Below, piece by piece: positions 32,790 through 45,697 of a DNA stretch of 64,000 nucleotides. The position numbers and the translations under genes are program-made. How positions within the stretch are numbered: position 1 is the first letter of the stretch; every line of letters starts with the position of its first letter. The notes beneath the pieces were generated by a model. The model was not told the DNA's origin. It made no database searches and saw only the letters and a list, made by a program, of their open reading frames with translations. The stretch is taken from positions 186,001 to 250,000 of the IMG/VR virus record IMGVR_UViG_3300047322_001237. One strand, 5' to 3'.

Positions 32790-32809
32790 AACCAAAAAAG
32801 AAGGAAGGT

Positions 32810-32843
32810 CATATCGGGAGGGCACGAGCCCTCCCTTTATGCC
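32810..32843. terminator. Repeated bidirectional terminator element
   Basis: CATATCGGGAGGGC-ACGA-GCCCTCCCTTTATGCC, identical arms to 24254-24287. Confidence 0.75.
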
Positions 32844-32858
32844 GTCTTCTCTTTTTCA

Positions 32859-33029: not shown

Positions 33030-33085
33030 GATTCGCTCCGAATAGATTGGTTTTGCAATCTCACCTGTGGATTGCGTTCGGGCGA

Positions 33086-33093
33086 GTCATATG
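33086..33093 (-). promoter_or_regulatory. Candidate phage early promoter CATATGAC
   Basis: YATATSAC-N5-YGA family. Confidence 0.5.
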
Positions 33094-33161
33094 TGTCTGA
33101 GAATTTCTGGAATCCTCGATTGACGGCTTGCTACAATTTCTCTTTCCTCAGGAGTTTTGTA

Positions 33162-33488
33162 ATGGCAAGGCAACCTCGCGCGACACTCGAACAACTACGC
33201 GAACGACTGGCGACGGTGCAGGAACAAATCGCCAAGGAAGAGGAGAAGCGGCGCACGACGGCGCTTGAGGAGATTCATTCGCTGATGTTTCAGCACGGAC
33301 TCACGCCGACTGACATCGAAGCGAAAGGGAAACGAGGGCCGGCGAAGAAGCAATCGAAAGCTGCTTCAAAGACGACGGTCGCGCCGAAGTATCAGGATCC
33401 GAAGACGGGCGCGACGTGGAGCGGTCGCGGTCGCGAACCGCTGTGGATCAAGGGCAAAAAGCGCGAAAAGTTTTTGATCGCGAAGTAA
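33162..33488 (+). CDS. hns: H-NS family nucleoid-associated protein (Burkholderia Bv3F-like)
   Basis: Coiled-coil N-term; VAPKYQDPKTGATWSGRGREPLWI DNA-binding motif; AGGAG RBS; extended -10 TGCTACAAT upstream. Confidence 0.92.
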   Translation: MARQPRATLEQLRERLATVQEQIAKEEEKRRTTALEEIHSLMFQHGLTPTDIEAKGKRGPAKKQSKAASKTTVAPKYQDPKTGATWSGRGREPLWIKGKKREKFLIAK

Positions 33489-33511
33489 GCGAGCATCTTA
33501 GTGATCGCCCG

Positions 33512-34285
33512 TTACGCTGCGGGGTCCGGTTCGTCGTCAGGCGCCGGATCGTTCTTCTCCGTTTGATCCTTAATGTTCGACCCTTTCCTGCTTCTTGGTT
33601 TTGACTTCGCTTTTGATTCAGGTGCACTAGAGGACCTTTCGGAAGCGCCTGCTGACGTGCTCTCGTTCCGTGGCAGTTTCGGGACGAAACCAAGGTAGTC
33701 GCCAATCCGCTGGCGGATACTTTCCTCCAAACCGTGGGAGAGCCCACTGGCGATTCCACAAATCACCATCCCCAATGGCACGGAAATGAGCAAGAGCATC
33801 GTGTCCTTGCCAACGATAAAGCCAGCATACGCGCCAATTGCCGAACCGGAGGCACGCACTAAATTTTCTAATGAGATGCTGCTAAGTGGGGAGCTTTCGA
33901 ATGGAACAATGCTCTCGTAAGACAAGTAATTCACAAACTCCATGGCATGTCCGTAGTTGACCTCTCGAAGAGATCTAGACTCATGTATGACATCCCTTAA
34001 TGCTTTCCTTGGGTCGAGTCCCTTCAAGGGTTGGTCAGCATTAGGATTTGTGATCTCTTTGAAATAGTCGAAACGCCCAATTAGGGCTCTTTTTTGCCAG
34101 TCGAGGCGGTACCGCTTCAGCTCCACGTTTTCATCCCGAATCGGTCGGACGAAACCCTCAGGAAAGCACCGCTGCGGAACGCTGAACAAATGCGCAGACA
34201 GACCACTTTCTTCGTCGTAGATCGTGGTCTCGTAAAACTGAGGCTTCCGATAAAACTTGGGCGTGCCCGGTTGTTCATCAGTCAT
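33512..34285 (-). CDS. Hypothetical membrane-associated protein, lower GC
   Basis: 257 aa with Gly-rich hydrophobic hairpin (AIGAYAGFIVG...LLISVPLGMVICGIASGL). Confidence 0.6.
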   Translation of the reverse strand: MTDEQPGTPKFYRKPQFYETTIYDEESGLSAHLFSVPQRCFPEGFVRPIRDENVELKRYRLDWQKRALIGRFDYFKEITNPNADQPLKGLDPRKALRDVIHESRSLREVNYGHAMEFVNYLSYESIVPFESSPLSSISLENLVRASGSAIGAYAGFIVGKDTMLLLISVPLGMVICGIASGLSHGLEESIRQRIGDYLGFVPKLPRNESTSAGASERSSSAPESKAKSKPRSRKGSNIKDQTEKNDPAPDDEPDPAA

Positions 34286-34327
34286 GGCGACGAATCCCCC
34301 TAGGTAATCGACTTCACATAAATGAAA

Positions 34328-34630
34328 TCAACTCTCTCCAAACGATCTCGCGAGCTTTTCCCATCGCCGCTGCAACAGGTCGATCACTTTTTGGTTACGC
34401 TCTCGCCCGACCGTTGCCATCTCGAAATACTCTTCGATCGATGCTTCCACCTTGGCCGGATCGTCCCCAACGATCTGATGCCAGGGGCCGACGTAGGCCA
34501 CGATCAGGCTGTCATGGAAGATGCAGCGCCCGATCGCCGCGCCAGCGGACATTACGAAGCCTTCATAATGACACCCCTTGAGAGGCCGTCCGTCGGCGGG
34601 CAGGTTTCGAAAATGCAGTTCCACCTTCAT
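34328..34630 (-). CDS. Hypothetical protein
   Basis: 100 aa, protein-like composition. Confidence 0.5.
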   Translation of the reverse strand: MKVELHFRNLPADGRPLKGCHYEGFVMSAGAAIGRCIFHDSLIVAYVGPWHQIVGDDPAKVEASIEEYFEMATVGRERNQKVIDLLQRRWEKLARSFGES

Positions 34631-34818
34631 CGTGCTTTGGGGCTCCGTGTCGAGGGTCGATCCGCCAAGACCTGACTACGGACAGCAAAATGCGTACATG
34701 CGGGGTTGTGCCCCTAACTTTTTACCGGTTTCACGCCGTCGACGCGCCGTCAACTGCGCTCAAATAACCCTCGGCACCTTCGACACTCGTACAACTCAGA
34801 GTCGGTCGTCGCAGGCTC

Positions 34819-35067
34819 CTATTTGCTTAGCGACGAGTTCCGGAACCATCGCGTTTGCGAATCTTGCCGTTGTTTCGAAATTCGTTCGTCCAAAGCTAGC
34901 TGCAGGTCGTCGATGTGCTTTGTGGCGACCGCAAGCGCGGAGGCTGCGGAGCGGTCGGTATTGAAGAGCCGTTTAAGTGTCTCCACACGCTGCTCGCGCG
35001 GGACGGCCCGCGTGTCGGGGTACAGCACGGCGAGGATGTCGATAAACTGCTCAAGGTGATTTGACAT
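34819..35067 (-). CDS. Hypothetical protein
   Basis: 82 aa helical. Confidence 0.45.
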   Translation of the reverse strand: MSNHLEQFIDILAVLYPDTRAVPREQRVETLKRLFNTDRSAASALAVATKHIDDLQLALDERISKQRQDSQTRWFRNSSLSK

Positions 35068-35222
35068 AACTGTTTTTAGCGAACTTTTACGGATTACTTA
35101 CATAAACTTGGCACGTGCAATGCTGAAACGACACGGCGTGACCATGTCACGCGTGGTCTCCTCGTATTGGGCCCGTCGCCAGTCCCCAGCGTGACGGGCA
35201 TTTTTTTTAACGAGCAAGACCG

Positions 35223-35459
35223 CTACACGCGGTAGCCATGGGAGGCTAGCAGTTCCCCGATATTCGCCCCTTCCCACGAGCCGGGCCGACTGTGCACCAT
35301 GGCGGCGTCTTCCGCGAGCATGACGAGCAACGCCTTAGCGTCCAGTGGTCCGTGGGTAGTCGCGCCGTCGCGCTGCTTGTTCACAACGCTGCATGCTTCG
35401 GCGACCATGACCAAGCCGCGGTAGACGTCGTCTCTAAGCTCCATCTCGATCTTGACCAT
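35223..35459 (-). CDS. Hypothetical protein
   Basis: 78 aa, GGAGG RBS. Confidence 0.6.
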   Translation of the reverse strand: MVKIEMELRDDVYRGLVMVAEACSVVNKQRDGATTHGPLDAKALLVMLAEDAAMVHSRPGSWEGANIGELLASHGYRV

Positions 35460-35518
35460 CGGTGCCTCCGCTGCGGGTATCGGCTTTGCTGCGGGCAGAT
35501 TATCAGAGGGAGGTCGTC

Positions 35519-36016
35519 ATGTGCTACGGAAAACCAGAAGAGCTACTTGCTCAGCTTTTGCAAGCGCGGCCATTGAAGCCAAACCAGTACGGCCATACCG
35601 CGCTGGAAGACTTCGAGCATTTCTGTGCTTACTCGGGGTGCGACCCGAATAACACTTGGGCTAAGCTAGCCTTCGTAACAGCGAGTCTTCCACCATCAAC
35701 CCCGAAGGGCCATGCCATGAGCGAAGAACTCGAAAAACAGTGCGCTGACATTAGCATGCTCCTGCGCGATCATCCGCCCGGAACAACGGCCGACATCGCG
35801 GAGTTTTGTATCGTTTATTGGGACGGCGACAGACTCGTCGGTGCGCATCTGTCCGCGGATCACCCGGGCCAACCAGACGAGCCATTTGACGTCGACGAGG
35901 TGTTGTCAGAGATTCCGGAATGCGTCGACGAATGGCTGAAGGCACCGAAGTACTCCTTCAGGCCGACAATCGTCGAATGGATGAAGGACTCGCCGCCGCG
36001 TGAATCGGGGGCGTGA
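35519..36016 (+). CDS. Hypothetical protein
   Basis: Start moved to MCYGKPEE with GGAGG RBS; a second start is possible at MSEELEK. Confidence 0.5.
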   Translation: MCYGKPEELLAQLLQARPLKPNQYGHTALEDFEHFCAYSGCDPNNTWAKLAFVTASLPPSTPKGHAMSEELEKQCADISMLLRDHPPGTTADIAEFCIVYWDGDRLVGAHLSADHPGQPDEPFDVDEVLSEIPECVDEWLKAPKYSFRPTIVEWMKDSPPRESGA

Positions 36017-36022
36017 GCTTCC

Positions 36023-36664
36023 GTGAGCCTGCCGATAATCGAGCCGGGCGACATGATGCACGGCGTGCGAGTACGCGCGCCCTTCTCTCGCGATGGCTGG
36101 ATCTTTGAGATCAAATACGACGGGTATCGCGCCTTTATCCGCAAGCAAGCTGACCGCGTCGAACTTCTATCTCGCCACGGCACGGTCATGAATGCAGTCT
36201 TTCCGGACATCATCGAGGCCGTTAGCGCGGTGCCCGGAAACTTCATTTGGGACGCCGAGCTCACGGTCGACGAGAGTAACGGACGTTCTTCGTTCGAGGG
36301 CCTTCAACAGCGAGGGCGCTTACGCGTTCCGATGCGTGTCCGTGCAGCCGCGCGCGAGCGCCCTGCCCGTCTCTACGTCTTCGATATCCTCGCCTCCGAA
36401 GATGACGACCTACGACAACTCCCGCTCGACCAACGAAAGGAAATCCTCAGAGACACGTTCGATGACAACTCGGTGCTGATCTACGCAGGGGGAATCATCG
36501 GCGCCGGTGAATGGGTCTTCGAGCAGGCGCAGAAACTCGACCTCGAGGGCGTCATGGCGAAACGCCTCGACTCGCTCTACGTGGCGGGTCGCTCCCATGC
36601 ATGGCAGAAGGTCAAGAACCTAGACTACAGCCGCCCTGCTGCTCTCGGTATCGGTCGCCGGTAA
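36023..36664 (+). CDS. ATP-dependent DNA ligase, adenylation domain only
   Basis: Motif I EIKYDGYR, III WDAEL, IIIa YVFDIL, IV EGVMAK, V WQKVK; no OB domain. Confidence 0.85.
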   Translation: MSLPIIEPGDMMHGVRVRAPFSRDGWIFEIKYDGYRAFIRKQADRVELLSRHGTVMNAVFPDIIEAVSAVPGNFIWDAELTVDESNGRSSFEGLQQRGRLRVPMRVRAAARERPARLYVFDILASEDDDLRQLPLDQRKEILRDTFDDNSVLIYAGGIIGAGEWVFEQAQKLDLEGVMAKRLDSLYVAGRSHAWQKVKNLDYSRPAALGIGRR

Positions 36665-36666
36665 CA

Positions 36667-37380
36667 CTACGCGCCGGTCGCCGCGAGGATCGATTGCATC
36701 GCCGTTGGCGCAAGCGTCCTCGCAGGCTTGCTGGAACGTCCATAGGGACTGAGCAAGATCGGCGACGGCTTCAGTGCTAAATCGAAAGGCTCGACACCGA
36801 TGGGACCTTTTCGCTTCACGATGTTGACCGAGACGCCGTCGGCTGCTGGCCGGATGGCGAGTCGCAGCGACGCGGGCGATGTGTCCTGCTGCACGGCAAG
36901 CGGACGGAAAACGAAAAACAGCATCTCCGACGACTGCGAGACCAGTAACAGACGCCGCAGCGATTCGGGACGCATGTGCTGCTGCCACAGTAAGACCGCC
37001 CCGCATGTATTCGCCTTCAGTATCTGCTCAGTCGACCAGAGCACGTCCGCCGTCTTTTCGACCTCCAGCCGAATCAACTTCTCCGGCGGAACGCCGATAT
37101 ACGCGAGTCCCTGGACGTTCGGAACATGTGGCGGTTTGATTAATACAACAGGCCGTTTCGCCACCGTGGTCAGCGCCGGCTGCAACATGCGCACTTCGCC
37201 GATCCCTGGCTGTTGGACTAGCAGTTCGACCAAGGTGCCAATCGGCCACCCCCCGCCAGGCAATTCCGCCGATAGCCGGTCGTAGCCGGTGTCGACCGTG
37301 CGCCCTGCCCTTCTTGCCAACTGGTTACCGCGCCAGAGGGACGGGTGGATTTCTTCAATGTCCTTGGGAAGTGCTGACAT
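36667..37380 (-). CDS. imuA: ImuA/SulA-like RecA-fold protein
   Basis: HPSLWRG...TGYDRLSAELPGGGWP...ELLVQQPGIGE...LWSTEQILK...LRRL; start MSALPKD. Confidence 0.85.
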   Translation of the reverse strand: MSALPKDIEEIHPSLWRGNQLARRAGRTVDTGYDRLSAELPGGGWPIGTLVELLVQQPGIGEVRMLQPALTTVAKRPVVLIKPPHVPNVQGLAYIGVPPEKLIRLEVEKTADVLWSTEQILKANTCGAVLLWQQHMRPESLRRLLLVSQSSEMLFFVFRPLAVQQDTSPASLRLAIRPAADGVSVNIVKRKGPIGVEPFDLALKPSPILLSPYGRSSKPARTLAPTAMQSILAATGA

Positions 37381-37395
37381 CGTCGCGCCTAAACA

Positions 37396-37411
37396 CTGTA
37401 TAGATGTACAG
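37396..37411. promoter_or_regulatory. LexA (SOS) box
   Basis: CTGT-ATAGATGT-ACAG, canonical CTGT-N8-ACAG, 15 nt upstream of the imuA start. Confidence 0.88.
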
Positions 37412-37834
37412 TATCCTACACCCTTTTTCGCGGCGCATCGTCTACCACTTAGGGAACCGCTTGGAGAGACAGTTAGTTGCGTGGTGAAAACCACAAAAAA
37501 CGTATCATTCATTACGTTTTGGCGCCGTGACTGTCTGCCAACCTCGGCCGACTTCCGGATCACGTCAAAGAACGCTTGCCAGCGGCCACTTAGTTCTTTT
37601 TCCGTGAAACATTCCCCGCGAGCTGCCGCCGACGCCTTGATTTAGAACAAGTTGGCGCCTTCGAAAATTTGTCCCGAGTGTTTCACGGGACGTCATTCGA
37701 ACTTAAGACTACTTCGAGGTTCCACGCCCTCTTCCCCGCCCTGCTTGACCGACAAAAAGTGACAGTACAGCGAAGTATACTTGCTCTGCCCTTGTTTACA
37801 AGCTAGAGTTCGACACAATTCGGTCGTGCGCCGC

Positions 37835-37874
37835 ATTCTTCGGTCGAAGGTGATTTTTCGAAAAACCGAAGAAT
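37835..37874. promoter_or_regulatory. Inverted repeat upstream of parA (candidate ParA operator)
   Basis: ATTCTTCGGT-N20-ACCGAAGAAT, overlapping the palindrome TTTTTCGAAAAA. Confidence 0.5.
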
Positions 37875-37896
37875 CCACAACAAAGGGGAACCTCTC

Positions 37897-39099
37897 GTGA
37901 ATGCAAGCACTCTGCTCGCCAGCGGCCTGCCGCCGGCGCTTGACTACGCCGCGTCCATGGACACATTGGCTGATGTGTCCGCCCGTGCCTCGGGTGTTCT
38001 AAATCAGATCCGCGATCGGATGCTGGAACCATATCCGCGCAAACGCCCGCCCACGTTCACGAGCGCACAGGTGGCCGGCCTGTGCGGACTTGAAAAAATG
38101 CGTTTCCAGTATCTGACTACGAAAGGCGATCTCCCCACCGGCACGTCGATTAAAAATGGCAAGAGCAAAGTCTTTACGTTGGAAGAGACACTACGGTATA
38201 TCCGGGCTGTCGGCAATCGCCCGCCGCGACCAGAGAACGCTCCCGGCAAAGTTGTGACGGTGGCCAACTTCAAAGGCGGTGTGGCTAAGACTACGACGGC
38301 CGTCTCGCTCGCTCAGGGACTCACCTTACGCGGTCGTAAGGTTCTCGTTATCGACTGTGATCCCCAAGGCACCGCTACGCAGTTATGCGGCTTCTCGCCC
38401 GAAACGGAAATAGGCGAGGAGATGACGCTCATGCCTTTGATCTACGGCGATGAAACGAGACTGGACTACGCAGTCCAACAAACCTACTGGCAGGACCTAG
38501 ACCTGGTCCCGGCGTCTTCCGGTCTCTTTAGCGCTGAGTTTCATATTCCGGGCAAGCTGGCCACCGACCACAAGTTCGAATTCTGGAACATCTTGAATCA
38601 GGGCCTCGAAGGCCTCAAAGACAAATACGACGCCATCGTCATCGACACTCCGCCATCTCTAAGTTATCTGACGATCAATGCGTTGATGGCGGCGAACGGA
38701 CTATTGATGCCCTGCCCGCCCGAGGGGCTCGACTTTGCCAGCTCCACTCAGTTCTGGTTCCTCTTCACCGAAATGTCGAGGCACGTTCCAGCAATGCGTG
38801 AGACGAAAGACTTCGATTTCGTCAATGTCGTGCTCACGAAATCGAAGAGTGACGACCTTTCCGGCGTTGTACGGGGCTGGCTGCAAAAGGCCTACGGAGA
38901 TCGAGTCCTTCCGTATGAGATTCCCGACTCCGTCGTCCCGAAGAGCGCATCTGCTCAACTCTCTACCGTCTACGACCTTACCAAGCCCGAGGGCAGCGTG
39001 GCAGCCTACACCCGCTTCAAGGATCCGATGGATCAGTTGGTGAGGCACATCGACTCCCAGTTTGTACAGGCTTGGGCGTCTTCCATGTTGGAGGTCTAA
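37897..39099 (+). CDS. parA: ParA partition ATPase (type Ia, N-terminal HTH extension)
   Basis: Deviant Walker A NFKGGVAKTT, DCDPQG, DTPPSL; GTG start with GGGG RBS. Confidence 0.95.
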   Translation: MNASTLLASGLPPALDYAASMDTLADVSARASGVLNQIRDRMLEPYPRKRPPTFTSAQVAGLCGLEKMRFQYLTTKGDLPTGTSIKNGKSKVFTLEETLRYIRAVGNRPPRPENAPGKVVTVANFKGGVAKTTTAVSLAQGLTLRGRKVLVIDCDPQGTATQLCGFSPETEIGEEMTLMPLIYGDETRLDYAVQQTYWQDLDLVPASSGLFSAEFHIPGKLATDHKFEFWNILNQGLEGLKDKYDAIVIDTPPSLSYLTINALMAANGLLMPCPPEGLDFASSTQFWFLFTEMSRHVPAMRETKDFDFVNVVLTKSKSDDLSGVVRGWLQKAYGDRVLPYEIPDSVVPKSASAQLSTVYDLTKPEGSVAAYTRFKDPMDQLVRHIDSQFVQAWASSMLEV

Positions 39100-40094
39100 T
39101 GCGCGCCGCTCAAAGACTTAGTGAAAAGATTGGTGACATCGACATCCCAGAACCCGGTCAATCGCCGGCGGCCGGTGATCCGTTTCGTCCAAGGACGGCA
39201 CCAGGTGGAGCGCTCGCCTTTCAGCATGCAATGCGCGAGAAGCAGGCCGAGCTCGACGCGATGTCCGCACAGCTGGCCGAACTGCAAGCTCAGAAGCAGA
39301 CGAACTCGCCCAGCGGCGTCGAGATTCCCCTCGACCAACTGCATGAAGTCGCAGGTCGCAGACGCTACATGCCGCCGGAAAAGTACAATGAATTGCGGGA
39401 AAACCTGCGGAACAACAAGCTGATTCAGCTGCCCGTCATTCTGCCACGTGCAGAAGGTGGCTTCGAAATACAGTCGGGACATCACCGGATCGACGCTTAT
39501 CGGGAACTCGGGCGTTCGACCATTCGCTGTGTTCTGGGTGACGCGACGGGCGATGAAGCTGACGACGGCGCGTTCTGGGCCAATCTGATGCAGTCGGACC
39601 TGACTGACTATGAGAAGTACGTTGGACTGACGCGCGTACATTCGAAACATCCGGAATTGGGCCAAGTCGAGCTAGGCGAGCTCGTCGGCATTAGCACTTC
39701 CCACCTCAACGCCCTGCTCTCTTTCGGTCGTTTGCCTGAGCAGGCCCGCGCGATTCTCGATACCAATAAGGCGATCATGGGCGCGAACGCGGCCGCGGCT
39801 TTTGCGGCTATCGCGGAGGCCGGCAAGGCGGAGCGGGTTGTGGAAGCGGTACGACGTCTCTCCGAGCGGGAGCTAGATCAGGCGCAGGCGGTGAAGTTTG
39901 CAAAAGCCGTTGAGACGCCCAAGGCAACGAAGCCGGCTGCTGAGTCGTACAAGGTGAAGACCGGAAAGAGTACGTGGTGCGATGTGCGCAAGACGAAAAA
40001 CATCATGCGCATCGAGTTCCAGTCCGAAGAGGTGGCCAATGCCGTCCAAGAAGCCATCAAGCAAACCCTCGAGGCGCTCGCCGCAAAGTCCTAA
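39099..40094 (+). CDS. parB: ParB partition protein
   Basis: TAATG overlap with parA; ParB N-domain (...FEIQSGHHRIDAY...) and HTH (ELGELVGISTSHLNALL). Confidence 0.93.
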   Translation: MRAAQRLSEKIGDIDIPEPGQSPAAGDPFRPRTAPGGALAFQHAMREKQAELDAMSAQLAELQAQKQTNSPSGVEIPLDQLHEVAGRRRYMPPEKYNELRENLRNNKLIQLPVILPRAEGGFEIQSGHHRIDAYRELGRSTIRCVLGDATGDEADDGAFWANLMQSDLTDYEKYVGLTRVHSKHPELGQVELGELVGISTSHLNALLSFGRLPEQARAILDTNKAIMGANAAAAFAAIAEAGKAERVVEAVRRLSERELDQAQAVKFAKAVETPKATKPAAESYKVKTGKSTWCDVRKTKNIMRIEFQSEEVANAVQEAIKQTLEALAAKS

Positions 40095-40162
40095 ACGCTA
40101 AGTGCTTGATTCTTTTGATTTCCTTAGTACGGAAAAAGGAGACGGCAGTGAAATAGCTGCTA

Positions 40163-40307
40163 GAAACACGAAGGCCCCCAGCTGGAAACTGAGGGCCTTC
40201 GCATAAGTGGGCTTGGCTGGAAACCGTCGCTCACTACACTCCCAAGCTGGAAACTTGGAAGGGTACTTCGTCAACCCCGAGTGTAGCGAATAGCGATCGA
40301 CAGTCAA
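40163..40307 (-). ncRNA. Candidate counter-transcribed RNA of the rep leader, with its promoter
   Basis: Minus-strand TTGACT-16-TACACT (40307-40280); transcript would fold CCAAG and GAAGGCCC hairpins and end at GTGTTTCT. Confidence 0.55.
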
Positions 40308-40345
40308 GCAAATTCAATCCATTTTTGAGAAATGGACCGCTCGAC

Positions 40346-41434
40346 ATGTCTATCGCGCAACAGCTCGTTGCTGGCGAGGGTGAAACACACCCCGACGATT
40401 CAGCAGCCCTCACCGCTTTCCGGTGTGACTCGACAAACCTGCCTTGGGTCATCTTCCGGGCTGCGTTCCGTGCAGCACACATTGAGGAGATCCCTCCTCG
40501 CGCACGTGCGGTTCTTTCCGCCCTCGCCCGCACCGTCGACGCCGCCAAGCCGTTCGCCGCGATCTTCGCTCGTCGTGAACTGCTCACAGGACGCGCACTG
40601 CAATCCATGCGCACCTTCTACCGCAGCCTCGATGACTTGGAGTCCGCCGGTCTAATCGATCGCCGCGCTCAATCCCGCTACGTTGAAGCCGGTCTCTTCG
40701 GTCGTGCCTACATCCACCTCACCGCGCGAGCAGCCGAGCTTCTAGGGCTCGTTGAGTCGATGCAACCGCCCTCACCTGAGCCCGTCGAATCTTCGCTTCC
40801 GCATCCGTCTGCCAACTTGGCAGACGGTGGAATATATAAGGATCTAAGCCCTTCTGTTTTTCAAAAGAGACAACCGGGGCAAGTGCCTGAGGATCTCCAG
40901 CGTCTGCGGTCCCTGGGTTTTTTTGATTTCTTGATTTTCAAACTCATGCGGGAAGCGCGTGAGCATGGCAAACGTCTCTCGGATGTCGTGGAAGCAACAT
41001 GGGACCACCTGAAGCTCGCCAAAGCCCCAATCAACTACCTGCGGAGTCTGCTGCGGGGAACGGTTGATTTCGCTCACCAACTGCGCGCCAGGATTAACGT
41101 CAAAGCCGAGGAGCAGGCTCGGGTGAAGCGCACCTTGGAAGCCGATCAGGTAGCCCGTCAAAGCGCCGGCAAAACGTTCCTAGACGCCTCGGGGGCACGC
41201 AAGTACGTGATCGATGCCGACGGCGAGAACATGGTCGTCTACAACCGTGACGAAGGCATTGGTCGACAAGCCGCGGGTTGGAAAGAAGGTTTTGCTGCAG
41301 CGCTCGCTCGAGGTCAGATCCGTGCGGCGAGCAGCTACGTGCAGCCGGAGCAGGGCAGGGAACGTCCGCCAGTTACAGCACAGGTTCGGGAACACATCGC
41401 GGGACTGCGCAGCCTGCTGGGAGCTCGTCGCTAG
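40346..41434 (+). CDS. Replication initiator of Burkholderia chromid/megaplasmid type (winged-helix, often annotated replication protein O)
   Basis: NLPWVIFRAA...RARAVLSALARTVD...IFARRELL...RTFYRSLDDLE...GLFGRAYIHLT; third gene of the parA-parB-rep cassette; start may be TTG 40325. Confidence 0.8.
   Translation: MSIAQQLVAGEGETHPDDSAALTAFRCDSTNLPWVIFRAAFRAAHIEEIPPRARAVLSALARTVDAAKPFAAIFARRELLTGRALQSMRTFYRSLDDLESAGLIDRRAQSRYVEAGLFGRAYIHLTARAAELLGLVESMQPPSPEPVESSLPHPSANLADGGIYKDLSPSVFQKRQPGQVPEDLQRLRSLGFFDFLIFKLMREAREHGKRLSDVVEATWDHLKLAKAPINYLRSLLRGTVDFAHQLRARINVKAEEQARVKRTLEADQVARQSAGKTFLDASGARKYVIDADGENMVVYNRDEGIGRQAAGWKEGFAAALARGQIRAASSYVQPEQGRERPPVTAQVREHIAGLRSLLGARR
40805..40827. repeat. 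23-bp interrupted palindrome inside rep (candidate oriV)
   Basis: CCGTCTGCCAA-C-TTGGCAGACGG followed by AT-rich AATATATAAGG...TTTTTCAAAAG. Confidence 0.55.
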
Positions 41435-41467
41435 TCAGGACTGCTTAGTTTTTGAGCAAAAAAAAAA

Positions 41468-41487
41468 GACGGGTCCGAAGACCCGTC
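41468..41487 (-). terminator. Intrinsic terminator between rep and lipoprotein
   Basis: GACGGGTC-N4-GACCCGTC followed by a long T-tract on minus strand. Confidence 0.8.
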
Positions 41488-41492
41488 AAAAG

Positions 41493-42251
41493 TCAGTTGG
41501 CGAGCTGCCAGCCGTTATCCGTCAACAGCATGTAATACGTTGCCGTGTAACTGTAGCGCACGTCGTCGCTGTATTGACTCGGTTTAAGGTCAGTTGCCAG
41601 CATTGTACTAACCAGATTCGGACTGACATTCGGACATTCGGCGACAATATTTCGAGAAAACACGGATCGGATATTCTGTGCTTCTACCACTTTGTCGTGA
41701 TACGCCGTTGTCGTATCCCATGCCTTCAGCGCAGCGGCCTCAACGTCAGGATGCTGCTTGAGGTACATGTCCGAGTAGACATTGAGGGGATAGCTCACGG
41801 CGGCAGCGAGTCGGTCGTCACCTGGCTGCGACTCGCGAATCTGCGTGTTATAGGCGGCCTGCTGATCCTCAGAGAGGGACGCCCGAAGCGCATCGACCCC
41901 ATCTGACACGTCTTTTGCGTATTTCTGCAGCGACGCATCCGCCTCGTCCCGTGCCTCTTTATGCGATTTAAGATACTCATCCAAGTCGGTCAAGTATCGG
42001 ACGTTGGCACGTGCGGGTTTCATCACCACTTCGGCAGCCATCTGCATTTCGTAATGTCTGTCGTCGACCTTCACGCCATTGACCTTGTCGAACTTGGTTA
42101 TCTTGAAGAGATCACAGTCGGCTATATGGAGATTCTGCTCGACGCCCTTGCGTACATCCGACTCGGACGGGGACTGAGAACAAGCAGCCAAGGTGGCAAC
42201 CACTGAGGCGCACAGAGCCAGCCGGCCCACGCCGGTGCGCTGAATAAACAT
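41493..42251 (-). CDS. Lipoprotein
   Basis: MFIQRTG...LALCASVVATLAAC lipobox; downstream of promoter motif at 42344. Confidence 0.75.
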   Translation of the reverse strand: MFIQRTGVGRLALCASVVATLAACSQSPSESDVRKGVEQNLHIADCDLFKITKFDKVNGVKVDDRHYEMQMAAEVVMKPARANVRYLTDLDEYLKSHKEARDEADASLQKYAKDVSDGVDALRASLSEDQQAAYNTQIRESQPGDDRLAAAVSYPLNVYSDMYLKQHPDVEAAALKAWDTTTAYHDKVVEAQNIRSVFSRNIVAECPNVSPNLVSTMLATDLKPSQYSDDVRYSYTATYYMLLTDNGWQLAN

Positions 42252-42343
42252 GATTCTTTTCCTTTCTAATTGAAAACGTTTGCCCAGACGGGCAGGGGAG
42301 ACGGGAGTCGGAAGCCGCCGCATCTTAGACGAATATCGGCAGC

Positions 42344-42351
42344 GTGATATA
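42344..42351 (-). promoter_or_regulatory. Candidate phage early promoter TATATCAC
   Basis: YATATSAC-N5-YGA family, just after terminator 42381-42400. Confidence 0.6.
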
Positions 42352-42425
42352 ACTCTTTAGGAAAAAGACAAAAGAAAAACGGCCTGGGAAAACCCAGGCC
42401 GCTATGCCCTCAAGAGGGAAGGGGA

Positions 42426-42956
42426 TCAGTCGAAGCTATAACGCACGACTTCCTTGAGCGGGAGAATGCCGATCATCTTGCCGGACCCGCAACCCGCTAC
42501 CTCGCGAAAGAGGCGCACGTAGTTGGTGTCGATGTCCTCTTCCTCGCACCATGCGAAAAAGGAGATTGGATCGATCAGGCCAACGTTGCGCTCAGACGTC
42601 CGCCATTCGCTCAGATCGCGACGGACACGATGAGCGAGCGTACTGCCGATCGAGATCTTGCGACCGTCGAACGTGGTGAGTTCATCCATAGCGTCCAGAC
42701 TGCCTTCCACAGGAAGCACGCCATTGATCAAGCAGCAAGCCATGAGGCCCGACCAGACTTTTAGCTTTAAGTAGCGAGCGACCAACAGAATTTGATCGGC
42801 TGCAGATTGCACGTTATCAATACGCGCAACTGAAACGGACGGAACGAGTACGACACCTTTTGCGTCCGTCGTTTTTTCTGCAAGGTATTCGCGAAGTTCG
42901 ACGAACGCCCGTTGGTTTGCGGCGAGGCTGTCCTCGCCAAATGAAGAATGGCCCAT
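42426..42956 (-). CDS. Hypothetical protein
   Basis: 176 aa co-oriented with neighbours. Confidence 0.6.
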   Translation of the reverse strand: MGHSSFGEDSLAANQRAFVELREYLAEKTTDAKGVVLVPSVSVARIDNVQSAADQILLVARYLKLKVWSGLMACCLINGVLPVEGSLDAMDELTTFDGRKISIGSTLAHRVRRDLSEWRTSERNVGLIDPISFFAWCEEEDIDTNYVRLFREVAGCGSGKMIGILPLKEVVRYSFD

Positions 42957-42968
42957 GGTATCTGTACC

Positions 42969-43289
42969 TTATTTGATCTCATCGCCCATGCAGGCAACGA
43001 GCGATGGATGGATGAATGCGAGCTGTGTCGTGGTGAAAAGAATGTCGCGTTGGTCGTGTTTGCCGCTTTGCGTGGCCGTTGAGATCAAAGACTCCGAAAG
43101 GTCCTCCACGAGCACGAGATCCTTTTCAGACCAGACAAGCTTGTAGACTTCTGTTTGTTCCTTGATGTAATTGGTGAGTACCGACAGATACTCGGCCGCA
43201 GCTTTGATCTCAGCCGCGCAGGTCGGCGGATCCAGAAGCAGCATATTCAACACGGTGCGCTGTGTAGCGCTGAACCGCTTTTCACGCAT
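42969..43289 (-). CDS. Hypothetical protein
   Basis: 106 aa, GAGAG RBS, promoter motif at 43394. Confidence 0.6.
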   Translation of the reverse strand: MREKRFSATQRTVLNMLLLDPPTCAAEIKAAAEYLSVLTNYIKEQTEVYKLVWSEKDLVLVEDLSESLISTATQSGKHDQRDILFTTTQLAFIHPSLVACMGDEIK

Positions 43290-43393
43290 GATTTTACTCT
43301 CTCAGGTTGAGCCGTTCTCGGGATGCTACTAATGGTCGATGCCACCGACCCCTCAAGCAAGCGGGACTTCAATACTCCGCGTTGCTCAAGGGC

Positions 43394-43401
43394 GTGATAT
43401 A
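43394..43401 (-). promoter_or_regulatory. Candidate phage early promoter TATATCAC
   Basis: YATATSAC-N5-YGA family. Confidence 0.6.
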
Positions 43402-43487
43402 AGGCTGAAACTTTTTAGGATCGGCAAAAAAAAAAACTAAACGGCATAACTGCCAGAGGTTTCCCCCTGGCAGCGACAACCACGGCG

Positions 43488-43937
43488 CTACGCCGCTTTC
43501 TGCACCAGCTCCGGCGCGCGGTGGGTACCGCGGTTCGGCAGCTTTTCTTCGACCAGGAACGTCTGGATGTCCTGGCATGCTTGATACAGTTCCGACAACT
43601 CGTACTCGTATCCGGTCAGGAATTCGAGTCCGTCTTCGAGGCACTGGTGGTGCTTGAAGAGGTCGGTCGTTTGCTCATAGTCCGTCAAAAAGACACTGAA
43701 CACATTGCGATCCGTCTCGCAGATCCAGGCATTGCGGCAGCCGAAATGACGGCCTCCCGGATGCTTCTCGACGAACATCTTTAAACGCGTGACGCGCATG
43801 GTCCGCTCAGTGTGCTGAGTGATATGCGTGTTGCCACGGGGGGACCCCTGATGTTGGAACATCAGATACAGCATTTCAACGATAGCGGTCCCGACGGGGG
43901 TGATGCGATTAACGACAACGCGATTCATGCTTGACAT
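43488..43937 (-). CDS. Hypothetical protein
   Basis: GAGGA RBS at 43937; alternative start at 43799. Confidence 0.55.
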   Translation of the reverse strand: MSSMNRVVVNRITPVGTAIVEMLYLMFQHQGSPRGNTHITQHTERTMRVTRLKMFVEKHPGGRHFGCRNAWICETDRNVFSVFLTDYEQTTDLFKHHQCLEDGLEFLTGYEYELSELYQACQDIQTFLVEEKLPNRGTHRAPELVQKAA

Positions 43938-44101
43938 TCCTCGTTATAATTTTGTTGTTTAGCTGCTGTTCAAGTGAAACTCGTAAGAAAAGCTACTATC
44001 GATCGAGTGCGAGCGACCCGACCCCGTATGGCCTTTATTGTTTTTTTGGTTGTTGCCGGTTTTTGATTCGTTTGCTACCTATCCTTGATTAACCTCCTCG
44101 C

Positions 44102-45631
44102 TTACATTGCATTGGGGATAACGACTGACGAGTACGCCAGTGCGCGAGTTCTAAGCAATTCCTGATTCTTTTGCTGATACGCCATGTGCTTCTCGACGTC
44201 GGCGCAGTAAAAGGAAATGCATTCAGGCGTCTTTCCCGTCTTCAGCTTTCGAGTCCGGCCAAACATCTGCAGGATCTGCTGCTGACTGGAGATCGCCACG
44301 GACATGATGTTCGTGGTGAGGTTCGGGATGTCGACCGCGGTGCCTGCCGAGATCGGTGTCGTGACGCGGATGTCCGCTTCGATACAGTTCTCGAACGGGT
44401 CCTCTTCCACGTAACGACGCACGTCCAGGTTCGGATACTGCTTCTGCAGGAACTCCGTCACGAGCGTGCAGAATTCGATCGACGCGCAGAAAATGATCGC
44501 CTTCTCAGTCGGCTGATACGTCCTCAGGTACTTCGCCTTAAGCACCTGGTCAATCAGGTTGAGGTAGTTCTTCAGGACAGGCGGGTTCTTCATCAGGTAC
44601 TTCTCGAACACATGGTTCGAGTAGTTACCTTGCATGTCCTTGGTGCGGATGGCGTCAGGCCGCGCAATGCGGTAGAACAGGGCGGTCGCATTGGTGTAGC
44701 GGTCGTATGCCGGACCCTTATGGCGGTCAGGGGACGGATACGCGATCTCATACATCCGCTGGATGAACGCATCTTCCTTGTCGAGCGTTGCGGACAACGA
44801 CAGCGACTTATGGCAGTGCGTGTAGAGATCCACCAGGAAGTTCAGGTGAAAATCCTGGTGCACTTCGTCGATGAGGCGGAACCCCGATCGCAGCGTTTGC
44901 ATCAACTCCGATGGACGACATGCATAGCCCATCTCAAGCGTCTGGTCGCCGTACTCCTTGTAGAGTTTGAACCAGTTCTGGATCGTCTTGTTACTGATCA
45001 GGACGATCTTGCTCGTAAGCCGACCTTCGAGCGCCATCTCCAGAAGCGCCATCAGATGATCGCTTCCGCGGATGATCATCAGGTCTTCAATCGCGATGTC
45101 GAACACTTCGCGGATTTCGTCACGCCACTTCTCCAGATACATCGGCTTCACGATGATCACCGGAGCAAGGCGCGTCTTCGCCACAGCAAAGAGCGACGTT
45201 ACGCCTTTACCTTTACCCGTCTGAAACTCGATCAGCTTCGAGACCGAACCGTCCTCCTTGAGGACGTAGTCGACGCCTTCATCCTGATAGTCGTGCAGGT
45301 TCCAGCTGTCGAAGATCTTGAAGTCAACTTCTCGAACCGGCGGCAACTCGACCTGCTCGATGTCGACGAGCGAATCCTTCAGGTTGTGAAACGCGAGGTA
45401 TTCCTTGAATTTCTTCAGGACGTTGATGTGATAGCGATACTCACCAGTGTCAGCACAATGCGTCGCATAGACCGGAGGCTTCGGAGGCGGCTTTGTCGAA
45501 TAAGGACTCGGCTTGGCGCGAAGGGGCTGCACGAACTGCTTGGTGAATCCGAGCACCGCGGGCATGGCGCGCGGCGTCACCTTGCTGACGACGAAGTGAT
45601 GCGAATGAAGACGAATCAGAAGTTCAGCCAT
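44102..45631 (-). CDS. SF2 (DExH) helicase (phiKZ gp75-like)
   Basis: QTGKGK, DEVH, SAT, QMFGRTR motifs; start MAELLIRL. Confidence 0.9.
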   Translation of the reverse strand: MAELLIRLHSHHFVVSKVTPRAMPAVLGFTKQFVQPLRAKPSPYSTKPPPKPPVYATHCADTGEYRYHINVLKKFKEYLAFHNLKDSLVDIEQVELPPVREVDFKIFDSWNLHDYQDEGVDYVLKEDGSVSKLIEFQTGKGKGVTSLFAVAKTRLAPVIIVKPMYLEKWRDEIREVFDIAIEDLMIIRGSDHLMALLEMALEGRLTSKIVLISNKTIQNWFKLYKEYGDQTLEMGYACRPSELMQTLRSGFRLIDEVHQDFHLNFLVDLYTHCHKSLSLSATLDKEDAFIQRMYEIAYPSPDRHKGPAYDRYTNATALFYRIARPDAIRTKDMQGNYSNHVFEKYLMKNPPVLKNYLNLIDQVLKAKYLRTYQPTEKAIIFCASIEFCTLVTEFLQKQYPNLDVRRYVEEDPFENCIEADIRVTTPISAGTAVDIPNLTTNIMSVAISSQQQILQMFGRTRKLKTGKTPECISFYCADVEKHMAYQQKNQELLRTRALAYSSVVIPNAM

Positions 45632-45697
45632 AATGAACCTGCATAGAACGGAGGAAGGGGATTGCGCGGACGGTTGCAATCCCCCGCACTACGATGC

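What the first reader, a model, noticed from the sequence alone, without database searches (positions are those of the whole stretch)
37897..40094. ParABS segregation in a lineage that normally positions its genome with PhuZ and a protein shell
Established: chimalliviruses centre the nucleus with PhuZ filaments, and chimallin excludes most host proteins. Inference: ParAB serves a shell-free lysogenic state, and must be switched off or excluded when chimallin assembles. That implies a lifestyle switch not yet described for this family.
Basis: inference. Interest (0 to 1): 0.7.

Follow-up and report, generated by a model that had tools for sequence, protein, structure and literature searches.

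The report
Plasmid replicon inside a nucleus-forming phage
A 279-kb nucleus-forming jumbo phage, from a family regarded as strictly lytic, carries a complete, long-conserved plasmid partition-and-replication cassette, and a relative sits as its own replicon in a finished bacterial genome, which suggests these phages can persist as plasmids.

Summary
Window 37897-39099 encodes a long, P1-like ParA and 39072-40094 a ParB. The genome is a true chimallivirus, with chimallin, a phiKZ-type capsid protein, split virion RNA polymerase subunits and also PhuZ.

The pair is part of a larger unit: imuA-like, parA, parB and rep, plus conserved non-coding DNA. This is the replicon core of Caballeronia, Paraburkholderia and Cupriavidus megaplasmids such as pMOL28. 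It lies in a 12-kb island that the nearest cultured phage, FLC9, lacks.

The island is not an assembly artefact. Contigs from the source sample tie both of its sides to phage genes.

Four related chimallin-bearing elements have the cassette in the same slot. parA and parB are under strong purifying selection (dN/dS 0.03-0.12, dS above 1). One close relative carries a swapped parAB allele.

In Paraburkholderia adhaesiva ZD32-2, whose assembly has five contigs, such an element forms the 284-kb fifth contig.

A plasmid-prophage lifestyle is the best reading, but it is inferred. I found no centromere, no repressor or switch, and no expression data. Persistent infection, or domesticated plasmid derivatives, remain possible.

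The parts
37897..39099 (+). parA: a long (type Ia-like) Walker-type partition ATPase of 400 aa, with a GTG start and an N-terminal extension of about 110 aa.
   Evidence: Pfam AAA_31 2e-37. phrog_164 7e-53. The ATPase core aligns to P1/P7 ParA and a 407-aa long ParA from about residue 105. It is 67% identical to Caballeronia megaplasmid ParA and 90% identical to ParA of three other chimallin-bearing elements.
39072..40094 (+). parB: a centromere-binding protein with a ParB/Srx N-terminal domain (GHHRIDA = GxxRxxA) and an HTH domain. It overlaps the end of parA.
   Evidence: PHROG ParB families 1e-14. It aligns to solved ParB/Noc/Spo0J structures at 4.5e-08 over residues 83-269. It is 54% identical to parB of plasmid RPE67 p2. 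dN/dS is 0.06-0.12.
40346..41434 (+). rep: the putative replication initiator of the 'Replication protein O' plasmid family (362 aa from the ATG at 40346; the listed ORF starts at the TTG at 40325).
   Evidence: DNA is 82% identical to the rep gene of Caballeronia/Burkholderia plasmids. The protein family has 485 members and the top hits are 84% identical. It is 34% identical over its full length to the third gene of the pMOL28 parA-parB-rep unit. The AF2 model shows a winged-helix part but gives only generic fold matches.
36667..37563 (-). imuA-like gene, transcribed divergently from parA. It is part of the same replicon unit in host plasmids.
   Evidence: NCBIfam ImuA_translesion scores 215 bits against a cut-off of 150. 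The same imuA/parA-parB-rep arrangement occurs in several C. arationis replicons and in G005.
37781..37809 (+). sigma-70-type promoter candidate for parA: TTGCTC, 17 nt, TAGAGT.
   Evidence: Read from the sequence. Both hexamers are invariant in four phage elements although the flanking DNA has diverged, and are partly conserved in plasmids.
37835..37874 (.). Operator-like inverted repeat ATTCTTCGGT / ACCGAAGAAT between the promoter and the parA start.
   Evidence: Read from the sequence. It is conserved in all elements whose ParA is 90% identical. In G005, whose ParA is only 45% identical, a different inverted repeat (TTTCGCCAA / TTGGCGAAA) takes its place.
37602..37688 (.). Split inverted pair CCGTGAAACA ... 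TGTTTCACGG. These are the two halves of the canonical parS palindrome, set about 78 bp apart. Function unknown.
   Evidence: There are 2 matches in the window against 0.19 expected. The pair is invariant in the phage elements and is also found upstream of parA in three C. arationis replicons, whatever the ParB allele.
40181..40254 (+). Three GCTGGAAAC repeats in the parB-rep spacer. They are candidate centromere or iteron sites.
   Evidence: Three of the four matches in the window cluster here, against 0.5 expected. The repeats are conserved in plasmid homologues and in four phage elements, and G005 has a different motif. They do not co-vary cleanly with ParB or Rep.
41468..41487 (.). GC-rich hairpin flanked by A and T runs. 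It is a likely bidirectional terminator closing rep.
31950..44050 (.). 12-kb accessory island that holds the cassette, together with an H-NS-like gene (32898-33488), a LigD-type ligase domain (36023-36664) and small unknown ORFs.
   Evidence: Synteny with phage FLC9 is collinear on both sides, but the island has no counterpart in FLC9. FLC9 has no ParA. G005 has the same island in the same order.
44102..49990 (-). Phage backbone next to the island: a helicase and two split virion RNA polymerase beta-type subunits.
   Evidence: phrog_16, phrog_3015 and phrog_3295. These genes are collinear in FLC9, G001, G002, G004 and G005.
62513..64000 (-). Chimallin (nuclear shell protein). The gene runs past the end of the window, to genome position 250480.
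   Evidence: PF25677 Chimallin_Phikzvirus 3e-48, 165 bits.

Best explanation
The two ORFs are the partition genes of a complete plasmid-type maintenance cassette embedded in a complete chimallivirus genome. The cassette consists of an imuA-like gene, a long ParA, ParB, a Rep initiator and conserved non-coding elements.

The most likely function is to let the 279-kb phage genome persist as a low-copy extrachromosomal plasmid (a phage-plasmid, as with P1 or N15) in Caballeronia or Paraburkholderia hosts. The proposed steps are:
- Host RNA polymerase transcribes the cassette from a sigma-70-type promoter.
- ParA represses that promoter through the adjacent inverted repeat.
- Rep fires an origin nearby, using the host replisome.
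- ParB loads on a centromere that is not yet identified.
- ParA-ATP on the nucleoid separates the sister copies.

All of this needs naked, host-accessible DNA, that is, a state without the chimallin shell. PhuZ and chimallin would serve the lytic state.

Shown here: the identity of the genes, the architecture of the cassette, its linkage to the phage backbone, its conservation, the selection acting on it, and its occurrence as a separate contig in an isolate genome.

Inferred: autonomous replication, partition activity, the silent state and the switch.
For: 1. Gene identities are established.
2. The parA-parB-rep order and the parB-rep spacer match the replicon core of Caballeronia/Burkholderia megaplasmids and pMOL28.
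3. The cassette is physically linked to the phage. In the source sample, a 43.5-kb contig joins parAB to upstream phage genes. A 12.8-kb contig joins the 3' end of rep to the helicase and RNA polymerase genes. Both have depth 15.
4. The cassette sits in the same slot in G001, G002, P. adhaesiva C5 and G005. Their core genes are only 46-66% identical (or 84-97% in G005).
5. parA has dN/dS of 0.03-0.05 and parB 0.06-0.12, with dS above 1. The genes are therefore old and constrained, not a fresh passenger.
6. G005 keeps the island (ligase 74%, ImuA 81%, Rep 78%) but has a different parAB allele (45-48%) and a matching change of the operator repeat. This is the pattern expected under plasmid incompatibility pressure.
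7. The P. adhaesiva ZD32-2 assembly has exactly five contigs. The chimallin-bearing one is 284 kb, and its only detected ParA is the island's.
8. The type strain C. arationis LMG 29324 carries a near-identical phage: capsid protein 96% identical, chimallin 90%.
9. G000 has no tyrosine recombinase and has a full tail-fibre block. It looks like a complete phage without an integration route.
Against: - No centromere could be assigned. There is no multi-copy palindrome, and neither candidate element tracks the ParB allele.
- No repressor, S24 peptidase or other lysis-lysogeny switch was found.
- No RNA run was listed, so expression is unknown.
- Rep's role as an initiator rests on context and homology only.
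- Chimalliviruses are known to turn up in isolate assemblies as persistent infections without plasmid genes. Carriage in isolates is therefore not proof of a plasmid state.
- P. adhaesiva C5 carries 72 kb of bacterial genes and lacks detectable homologues of G000's tail-fibre block. It may be a domesticated derivative rather than an inducible prophage.
- Complete relatives G006, G009, G010 and G012, and phage FLC9, lack ParA.
- G000 comes from a metagenome, so its physical state is unknown.
Confidence: 0.6

Rival explanations
1. The cassette supports a persistent or carrier-state infection rather than true plasmid lysogeny. The phage remains essentially lytic, and ParAB-Rep only prolongs the survival or inheritance of phage genomes in slowly dividing infected cells, without a silent, regulated prophage state.
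For: Goslar- and Seoul-like chimalliviruses persist in isolate cultures without being temperate. No repressor or switch was found in G000. G000 keeps the full lytic apparatus, including PhuZ and chimallin.
Against: Those persistent phages lack ParA and Rep, so persistence does not need the cassette. A sigma-70 promoter, an operator and a plasmid initiator imply host-driven maintenance of naked DNA. The parAB allele swap points to incompatibility between stably co-resident replicons. C5 is a discrete replicon in a finished genome.
Confidence: 0.15
2. The cassette matters only for domesticated derivatives. Chimallivirus genomes that captured a host plasmid replicon became megaplasmids, as in P. 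adhaesiva C5 with its T6SS cargo. In an infectious phage such as G000 the island is a tolerated, selfish plasmid remnant with no role in the phage life cycle.
For: C5 has 72 kb of bacterial genes, and only 126 of 267 G000 proteins have homologues there. None of those homologues fall in the tail-fibre block. IMG/VR labels G001, G002 and G007 as proviruses, cut at or near the island. The island sits in a variable slot that FLC9 lacks.
Against: G000 and G005 have no bacterial cargo and are otherwise complete or collinear phages, yet they keep intact parA, parB and rep. Strong purifying selection with saturated dS across phage lineages is hard to reconcile with a useless remnant in a packaged genome. 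The operator co-varies with the ParA allele.
Confidence: 0.15
3. ParA and ParB act in the lytic cycle, for example by positioning or condensing phage DNA or the nucleus, or ParB acts as a nuclease or CTP switch against host defences. They would have no link to plasmid maintenance.
For: Stand-alone ParB-like proteins are common in lytic phages (mentions hits to ParB alone). ParA-family ATPases position many kinds of cargo (one search lists MinD and McdA relatives).
Against: The genes arrive as a block with Rep, an imuA-like gene and plasmid cis DNA that is 82% identical to host plasmids. The closest relatives are megaplasmid partition genes at the plasmid record origin. PhuZ already supplies positioning. 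Most relatives do without the cassette.
Confidence: 0.05
4. Assembly chimera: a host plasmid fragment was wrongly joined into a phage contig.
For: Logan contigs of the source run break inside rep. Depth rises there because other plasmids in the sample share that sequence. The 127-bp terminal repeat equals a common assembler k-mer size.
Against: Both contigs that flank the break contain phage backbone genes and have equal depth. Five independent records (G001, G002, G004, G005 and C. arationis) show the same junctions.
Confidence: 0.02

Closest known systems
Phage-plasmid P1 (type Ia ParA-ParB-parS plus the RepA/oriR plasmid replicon)
   Same: It is a tailed phage genome that carries a long ParA with an N-terminal extension, a ParB and a plasmid initiator. 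The expected autoregulation acts through an operator in front of parA. The prophage has no need to integrate.
   Different: P1 is a 94-kb phage that forms no nucleus, and it has a known C1 repressor, Cre/lox and a mapped parS. Here the host genome is a 279-kb chimallivirus with its own RNA polymerases, chimallin and PhuZ. No repressor, resolvase or parS was identified. Sequence identity to P1 ParA is low (E 9e-14 over the core).
N15 / phiKO2 / POI1126 phage-plasmids (SopAB-like partition)
   Same: These are the best ParA matches in the phage collection (27-33% identity). They are phages maintained as plasmids.
   Different: They are 40-60-kb siphoviruses, some linear with a protelomerase. None is a jumbo or nucleus-forming phage.
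pMOL28-type parA-parB-rep replicons of Cupriavidus, Caballeronia and Paraburkholderia megaplasmids (e.g. RPE67 p2, C. grimmiae p3)
   Same: They share the gene order, the divergent imuA-like gene, the Rep family, the parB-rep spacer with repeats and the split CGTGAAACA/TGTTTCACG pair. Identities are ParA 43-67%, ParB 33-54% and Rep 33-84%. From memory, not checked here: the pMOL28 par/rep region was shown to act as a minimal replicon (Taghavi et al. 1996).
   Different: Those replicons drive cellular plasmids and chromids. Here the same unit sits inside a phage genome between a structural-protein gene and a helicase.
Persistent Goslar- and Seoul-like chimalliviruses in bacterial isolate assemblies (bioRxiv 10.1101/2024.12.31.630880)
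   Same: They are chimallin-encoding jumbo phage genomes recovered from assemblies of cultured bacteria.
   Different: Those authors screened for plasmid replication and partition HMMs. They found only lone ParB hits and no ParA, and classed the phages as non-temperate. The present clade has a full parA-parB-rep unit.
Burkholderia phage FLC9 and Ralstonia phages RP12/RP31 (cultured phiKZ-like jumbo phages)
   Same: They are the nearest cultured backbones (RNA polymerase beta' 52% and 43% identical). FLC9 is collinear on both sides of the island.
   Different: FLC9 has about 3 kb of small genes in the slot and no ParA anywhere in its genome.

Membership tests
Type Ia ParABS partition system (P1 ParAB, F SopAB) | ParA is a Walker-type ATPase with the deviant Walker A motif KGGxxK[ST]. 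| tested here: met
   KGGVAKT is present in the translation. Pfam AAA_31 2e-37. The protein aligns to the Soj/ParA core.
Type Ia ParABS partition system (P1 ParAB, F SopAB) | ParA is the long form, with an N-terminal extension of about 100 aa that carries a DNA-binding HTH for autoregulation. | tested here: inconclusive
   The length criterion is met: the core starts at about residue 105-117, matching residue 97-111 of P1/P7 ParA. The HTH itself was not modelled. An operator-like inverted repeat that co-varies with the ParA allele supports autoregulation.
Type Ia ParABS partition system (P1 ParAB, F SopAB) | ParB has a ParB/Srx N-terminal domain and an HTH DNA-binding domain, and is encoded directly downstream of parA. 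| tested here: met
   It aligns to ParB/Noc/Spo0J over residues 83-269, with GxxRxxA present as GHHRIDA. PHROG ParB families match. The gene overlaps the parA stop. Pfam ParB_N is below its cut-off.
Type Ia ParABS partition system (P1 ParAB, F SopAB) | A cis-acting centromere (parS) is bound by ParB. | tested here: inconclusive
   No multi-copy palindrome was found. Two conserved candidate elements exist (37602-37688 and 40181-40254), but neither tracks the ParB allele.
Phage-plasmid (P1/N15-like lifestyle) | A complete set of virion and phage replication genes. | tested here: met
   Capsid protein, internal head proteins, gp29PR, DNA polymerases, RNA polymerase subunits and a tail-fibre block are present. 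CheckV rates the record 100% complete and it has a terminal repeat.
Phage-plasmid (P1/N15-like lifestyle) | A plasmid replication initiator and a partition system. | tested here: met
   The parA-parB-rep unit is homologous to megaplasmid replicon cores. Function was not assayed.
Phage-plasmid (P1/N15-like lifestyle) | Stable extrachromosomal maintenance in host cells. | tested here: inconclusive
   A relative forms a separate 284-kb contig in a five-contig isolate genome, and a near-identical phage is in the C. arationis type-strain assembly. However, C5 carries bacterial cargo, persistent infection is an alternative, and G000 itself comes from a metagenome.
Phage-plasmid (P1/N15-like lifestyle) | A lysis-lysogeny regulator and inducibility. 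| tested here: inconclusive
   G000 has no S24 peptidase and no tyrosine recombinase. An H-NS-like gene is in the island. Other repressor types were not searched for. Induction cannot be tested with these tools.
Chimalliviridae (nucleus-forming phiKZ-like phages) | Chimallin (ChmA) shell protein. | tested here: met
   PF25677 scores 165 bits and covers 12-574 of 627 profile positions.
Chimalliviridae (nucleus-forming phiKZ-like phages) | Split multisubunit RNA polymerases and a phiKZ-type major capsid protein. | tested here: met
   phrog_3015 and phrog_3295. PF25620 2e-191.
Chimalliviridae (nucleus-forming phiKZ-like phages) | PhuZ tubulin (present in many members, not all). | tested here: met
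   PF00091 scores 36 bits. A 366-aa ORF matches phiKZ gp39 at 3e-27 and PhuZ of 201phi2-1 at 4e-15.
pMOL28 / Caballeronia-type megaplasmid replicon | The order imuA-like (divergent), parA, parB, rep, with a conserved parB-rep spacer and a Rep of the 'Replication protein O' family. | tested here: met

The most novel reading that the evidence does not exclude
A clade of Burkholderiaceae chimalliviruses is truly temperate as phage-plasmids. The same 280-kb genome would alternate between two states. In one it is a naked, low-copy plasmid, transcribed by host RNA polymerase, replicated by Rep and segregated by ParAB. In the other it is a lytic genome enclosed by the chimallin shell and centred by PhuZ. 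Incompatibility with resident megaplasmids would drive the swapping of parAB alleles. Some lineages, such as P. adhaesiva C5, would have settled into megaplasmids carrying bacterial cargo such as a T6SS.
Probability: 0.4. Interest if true: 0.88.

Novelty: new variant of a known kind. Interest (0 to 1): 0.78.

Why it matters
Nucleus-forming jumbo phages are treated as obligately lytic. Their biology, from the injection vesicle to their own RNA polymerases and the chimallin shell, is built around never exposing their DNA to the host.

A plasmid-prophage state would mean the same genome can also live unshielded. It would then depend on host replication, transcription and nucleoid-based segregation. 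That raises several testable questions:
- What decides the entry route?
- How are the lytic genes silenced?
- How does such DNA escape host defences?

The finding also bears on three practical matters:
- Phage therapy and biocontrol with jumbo phages of Burkholderia, because temperate behaviour and gene carriage matter there.
- The interpretation of phage contigs in isolate genomes and of 'provirus' calls in virus databases.
- The origin of some megaplasmids.

The strains needed are public: C. arationis LMG 29324 and P. adhaesiva ZD32-2.

Tried and rejected
- **Chimeric assembly: rejected.** Source-run contigs tie both sides of the cassette to phage genes at equal depth, and five independent records share the junctions.
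- **Classical parS: not found.** There are no repeated 14-16-bp palindromes in the island or the genome, and generic repeat finding gave only chance-level pairs.
- **Split half-parS pair as the centromere: not supported.** It is kept in G005 and in C. arationis replicons with unrelated ParB alleles.
- **GCTGGAAAC repeats as an allele-specific parS: not supported.** The first comparison looked promising, but the wider table shows no clean correlation with ParB or Rep.
- **Integration.** G000 has no tyrosine recombinase. For P. adhaesiva C5 I looked for an empty site in 80 other Paraburkholderia genomes. The two flanks are never adjacent, and there is no tRNA or ncRNA at the junction. Integration is therefore neither shown nor excluded for that element.
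- **SOS-type repressor.** No S24 peptidase was found.
- **Rep fold.** The AF2 model (pLDDT 74) gave only generic MarR-like winged-helix matches (E above 0.1). There was no sequence hit to a solved structure and no Pfam or NCBIfam family.
- **Expression.** No RNA run was listed.
- **Defence functions among the island's unknown ORFs.** There were no PADLOC hits.
- **tRNAs.** None in the window.
- **Megablast of the region against phages.** No match.
- **ParA-ParB complex prediction.** Not run. It was judged unnecessary for the claims made here.
Full report
**1. Observation**

The first (37897-39099, +, 400 aa) is a ParA-family ATPase:
- It matches Pfam AAA_31 at 2e-37 and CbiA at 6.5e-18.
- It matches PHROG 'ParA-like partition protein' at 7e-53.
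- Its best NCBIfam models are the plasmid partition proteins RepA and SopA, both below their equivalog cut-offs.
- It carries KGGVAKT, the deviant Walker A motif.
- Its ATPase core begins near residue 105-117. This aligns to residue 97-111 of the long ParAs of P1/P7 and of a 407-aa Walker-A ATPase. It is therefore the long, type Ia-like form.

The second ORF (39072-40094, +, 340 aa) overlaps the end of parA. Its Pfam ParB_N match is sub-threshold (20.4 bits against 26.3). Other evidence shows it is a ParB:
- It matches three PHROG ParB families, down to 1e-14.
- It aligns to solved ParB, Noc and Spo0J proteins across both the N-terminal and HTH domains.
- The box II motif GxxRxxA is present as GHHRIDA.

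**2. The premise: is this a chimallivirus?**

The window is positions 186001-250000 of a 278,988-bp IMG/VR virus record. The record has a 127-bp terminal repeat and is rated complete. It encodes:
- chimallin (PF25677, 165 bits; window 62513 to beyond the window end);
- a phiKZ-type major capsid protein (2e-191);
- phiKZ internal head proteins, gp29PR and a divergent family B polymerase;
- split RNA polymerase beta subunits;
- a tail-fibre block.

It also encodes a tubulin that matches phiKZ gp39 (PhuZ) at 3e-27 and PhuZ of 201phi2-1 at 4e-15. The premise therefore holds, with one correction: ParAB comes in addition to PhuZ, not instead of it.

The nearest cultured phages are Burkholderia phage FLC9 (RNA polymerase beta' 52% identical) and Ralstonia phages RP12 and RP31 (43%).

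**3. What the pair belongs to**

The next gene (40346-41434) has no Pfam, NCBIfam or PDB match. Even so, its DNA is 82% identical to the 'Replication protein O' genes of Caballeronia and Burkholderia plasmids. Its protein family has hundreds of members in Caballeronia, Paraburkholderia and Cupriavidus, with top hits 84% identical.

ParA is 67% identical to the ParA at the origin of Caballeronia megaplasmid records. ParB is 54% identical to parB of plasmid RPE67 p2. The same parA-parB-rep order is annotated in three plasmids:
- RPE67 p2;
- C. grimmiae p3;
- pMOL28 of C. metallidurans, whose third gene is a full-length homologue of this Rep (34%, E 2e-36).

From memory, not checked here: the pMOL28 par/rep region was characterised as a minimal replicon.

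Upstream and divergent lies an ImuA-family gene (215 bits against a cut-off of 150). The same imuA/parA-parB-rep unit recurs several times in the C. arationis genome.

Non-coding DNA is conserved as well. The parB-rep spacer, with three GCTGGAAAC repeats (3 of the 4 window matches against 0.5 expected), aligns with the plasmid spacers. The feature is therefore a whole plasmid replicon core, not just a partition pair.

**4. Setting within the phage**

Protein-level synteny with FLC9 is collinear from window 20 to 32 kb and from 44 to 60.5 kb. The 12 kb in between has no FLC9 counterpart, and FLC9 has no ParA anywhere. Besides the cassette, the island holds an H-NS-like gene, a LigD-type ligase domain and small unknown ORFs. 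None of the unknown ORFs matches a PADLOC family.

The ParA hits in the phage collection that I saw are known small phage-plasmids (POI1126, N15, phiKO2, vibriophages) at 27-35% identity. No jumbo phage is among the 30 rows listed. I did not inspect the remaining 147 records.

**5. Not an artefact**

The genome comes from a rhizosphere metagenome, and several other samples hold parts of the same stretch. In the source run, one 43.5-kb contig ends at 40358. It therefore joins parAB to about 38 kb of upstream phage backbone. A 12.8-kb contig runs from 40849 through the rest of the island into the helicase and RNA polymerase genes. Both have depth 15.

The breaks lie only inside rep. Depth rises there because other plasmids in the sample share that sequence. 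Both sides of the only weak point are thus attached to phage genes.

**6. Relatives**

A search of IMG/VR with ParA found two records of about 140 kb (G001, G002) with ParA 90% identical. Both encode chimallin (37-38% identical) and RNA polymerase beta' (63-64%). Both have parA (90%), parB (84%) and rep (60%) in the same position next to the helicase (46%) and beta'.

A chimallin profile search of bacterial genomes found two isolates:
- Caballeronia arationis LMG 29324 (chimallin 90% identical, capsid protein 96%);
- Paraburkholderia adhaesiva ZD32-2.

In P. adhaesiva the chimallin contig C5 (284,264 bp) carries ParA at 90% identity, and this is its only ParA at E below 1e-20. The assembly has exactly five contigs: 3.38, 1.91, 0.91, 0.49 and 0.284 Mb. 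C5 is therefore most probably a complete replicon.

In C. arationis the phage contigs end at the two edges of the island. The likely reason is that the host has several paralogous copies of the cassette, which break a short-read assembly.

G005 is a metagenomic fragment and the closest relative (RNA polymerase subunits 95-97% identical, chimallin 91%). It has the whole island in the same order, but with different levels of identity:

| Gene or region | Identity to G000 |
|---|---|
| ligase | 74% |
| ImuA | 81% |
| Rep | 78% |
| island flanks | 82-95% |
| ParA | 45% |
| ParB | 48% |

Complete relatives G006, G009, G010 and G012 have no ParA. Ordered by RNA polymerase beta identity, ParA-positive and ParA-negative lineages interleave. 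The history therefore includes losses or repeated gains.

**7. Selection**

Between G000 and G001, G002 and G004, parA has dN/dS of 0.03-0.05 and parB 0.06-0.12. Synonymous divergence is above 1. The 90% protein identity thus reflects long-term constraint, not recent transfer. The parAB allele swap in G005, inside an otherwise conserved island, is what incompatibility between co-resident replicons would select.

**8. Cis elements**

Upstream of parA, four elements with the same ParA type have diverged in sequence but keep three features:
- a sigma-70-type promoter (TTGCTC, 17 nt, TAGAGT);
- a perfect 10-bp inverted repeat between the promoter and the start codon;
- a split pair, CGTGAAACA ... 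TGTTTCACG.

In G005 the inverted repeat is replaced by a different one. This is expected if it is the operator for the N-terminal domain of a type Ia ParA.

The split pair persists in G005 and in host replicons with ParB only 31-46% identical. It is therefore a family-wide element of unknown role.

The three spacer repeats exist in two variants. These variants do not follow ParB or Rep identity. No repeated palindrome exists in the island or the genome. The centromere is unassigned.

**9. Mechanism proposed**

The cassette most likely maintains the phage genome as a low-copy plasmid:
- Host RNA polymerase transcribes parAB-rep from the conserved promoter under ParA autoregulation.
- Rep opens a nearby origin for the host replisome.
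- ParB-centromere complexes are moved apart by nucleoid-bound ParA-ATP.

All of these steps need DNA that host proteins can reach, so they imply a state without the chimallin shell. G000 has no tyrosine recombinase. This is consistent with plasmid maintenance rather than integration.

The gene identities, linkage, conservation and selection are shown here. The activities and the existence of a silent state are inferred.

**10. Caveats and rivals**

- I found no repressor (no S24 peptidase). An H-NS-like silencer in the island is only a lead.
- No RNA run was listed.
- A 2025 preprint shows that Goslar- and Seoul-like chimalliviruses persist in isolate cultures without plasmid genes. It states that only lone ParB hits and no ParA were found. 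Isolate carriage alone therefore does not prove a plasmid state. The same result also shows that the present cassette is not a general trait of persistent chimalliviruses.
- P. adhaesiva C5 is a hybrid. About 211 kb is collinear with G000 (126 of 267 proteins). About 72 kb is ordinary bacterial DNA: MFS transporters, dehydrogenases, a T6SS cluster and a porin. No homologues of G000's tail-fibre block were detected. C5 may be a domesticated megaplasmid. That would show the cassette can carry such an element, but not that an infectious phage uses it.
- Its bacterial flanks are not adjacent in other Paraburkholderia genomes, and no tRNA lies at the junction.

**11. Novelty**

Phage-plasmids with type Ia partition are classical (P1, N15). 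A chimallivirus with a full plasmid replicon is not described in the 2025 Annual Review of nucleus-forming phages, the 2026 review of jumbo phages, the chimallin/PhuZ survey or the huge-phage collection that I searched. I rate it a new variant of a known kind, of high interest to the field. The decisive experiments are feasible on public strains.

Noticed in passing
window 32898-33488 (+): An H-NS-like protein (H-NS C-terminal domain 3.5e-13, plus a sub-threshold match to the N-terminal domain) lies in the island. It is conserved in G005 and C. arationis (63-65%). It could act as a xenogeneic silencer of the phage genome, which is somewhat more AT-rich. This is speculation.
   Followed up: partly
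window 36667-37563 (-): A stand-alone ImuA-family gene, with no ImuB or DnaE2 beside it, is transcribed divergently from parA. The same pairing recurs in Caballeronia plasmid replicons, so it seems to be a fixed part of this replicon type. Its role there is unknown.
   Followed up: partly
window 36023-36664 (+): A 213-aa ORF consists only of an ATP-dependent (LigD/NHEJ-type) ligase adenylation domain, without the OB-fold or polymerase/nuclease parts. It is conserved in G005 (74%).
   Followed up: no
G004 (P. adhaesiva ZD32-2) contig C5, 1-49 kb and 266-284 kb (loci L065-L067, L077, L078): The chimallivirus-like block is joined on both sides to bacterial genes: a T6SS cluster (TssF, TssM, VgrG, ClpV), MFS transporters, an aldehyde dehydrogenase, a GMC oxidoreductase, PdxA and a porin. 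The phage map is opened between the homologues of G000 genes 66321-69374 and 71510-73483.
   Followed up: partly
L060 (C5 176-196 kb) and L020:1-7900: The islands of the relatives carry different cargo. C5 has a KfrA-like protein, an SRAP peptidase and an AbiJ abortive-infection protein. G002 has SRAP, a 459-aa tyrosine recombinase and a 743-aa unknown protein.
   Followed up: partly
IMG/VR records G001, G002, G007 (L019, L020, L091): The IMG/VR 'provirus' boundaries fall at or next to the plasmid-like island. ParA lies 1.5 kb and 7.9 kb from the record ends of G001 and G002, and G007 starts just beside the slot. The virus caller probably treats the island as host DNA and so truncates these genomes to about 50-60% 'completeness'.
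   Followed up: partly
G003 (C. arationis LMG 29324) contigs C145, C413, C445, C591 (L048, L049, L051, L053): One bacterial genome holds at least four paralogous imuA/parA-parB-rep replicon cores (ParA 44-66% identical to the phage's, Rep N-terminus up to 95%). This probably explains why its phage contigs break at the island.
   Followed up: partly
G004:C4:437487-438929 (L059): A second homologue (58%) of the phage's 529-aa backbone protein (window 30329-31918) sits on the 493-kb contig C4 of P. adhaesiva, away from the chimallin contig. No second capsid gene was found in that genome.
   Followed up: no
window 40164-40995: In all four metagenome runs, extra contigs with divergent flanks and higher depth pile up on the rep 5' region and its upstream spacer. 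Related plasmids with near-identical rep sequence therefore coexist with the phage in these rhizosphere samples.
   Followed up: partly
G011:C1:70349-72520 (L100): The RNA polymerase beta homologue of this 208-kb relative contains one in-frame TAA. The cause could be a sequencing error, a pseudogene or an intron. It was not examined.
   Followed up: no
G000 145373-154750 (-), outside the window: A 3125-aa ORF lies within the tail-fibre block. It was not characterised.
   Followed up: no
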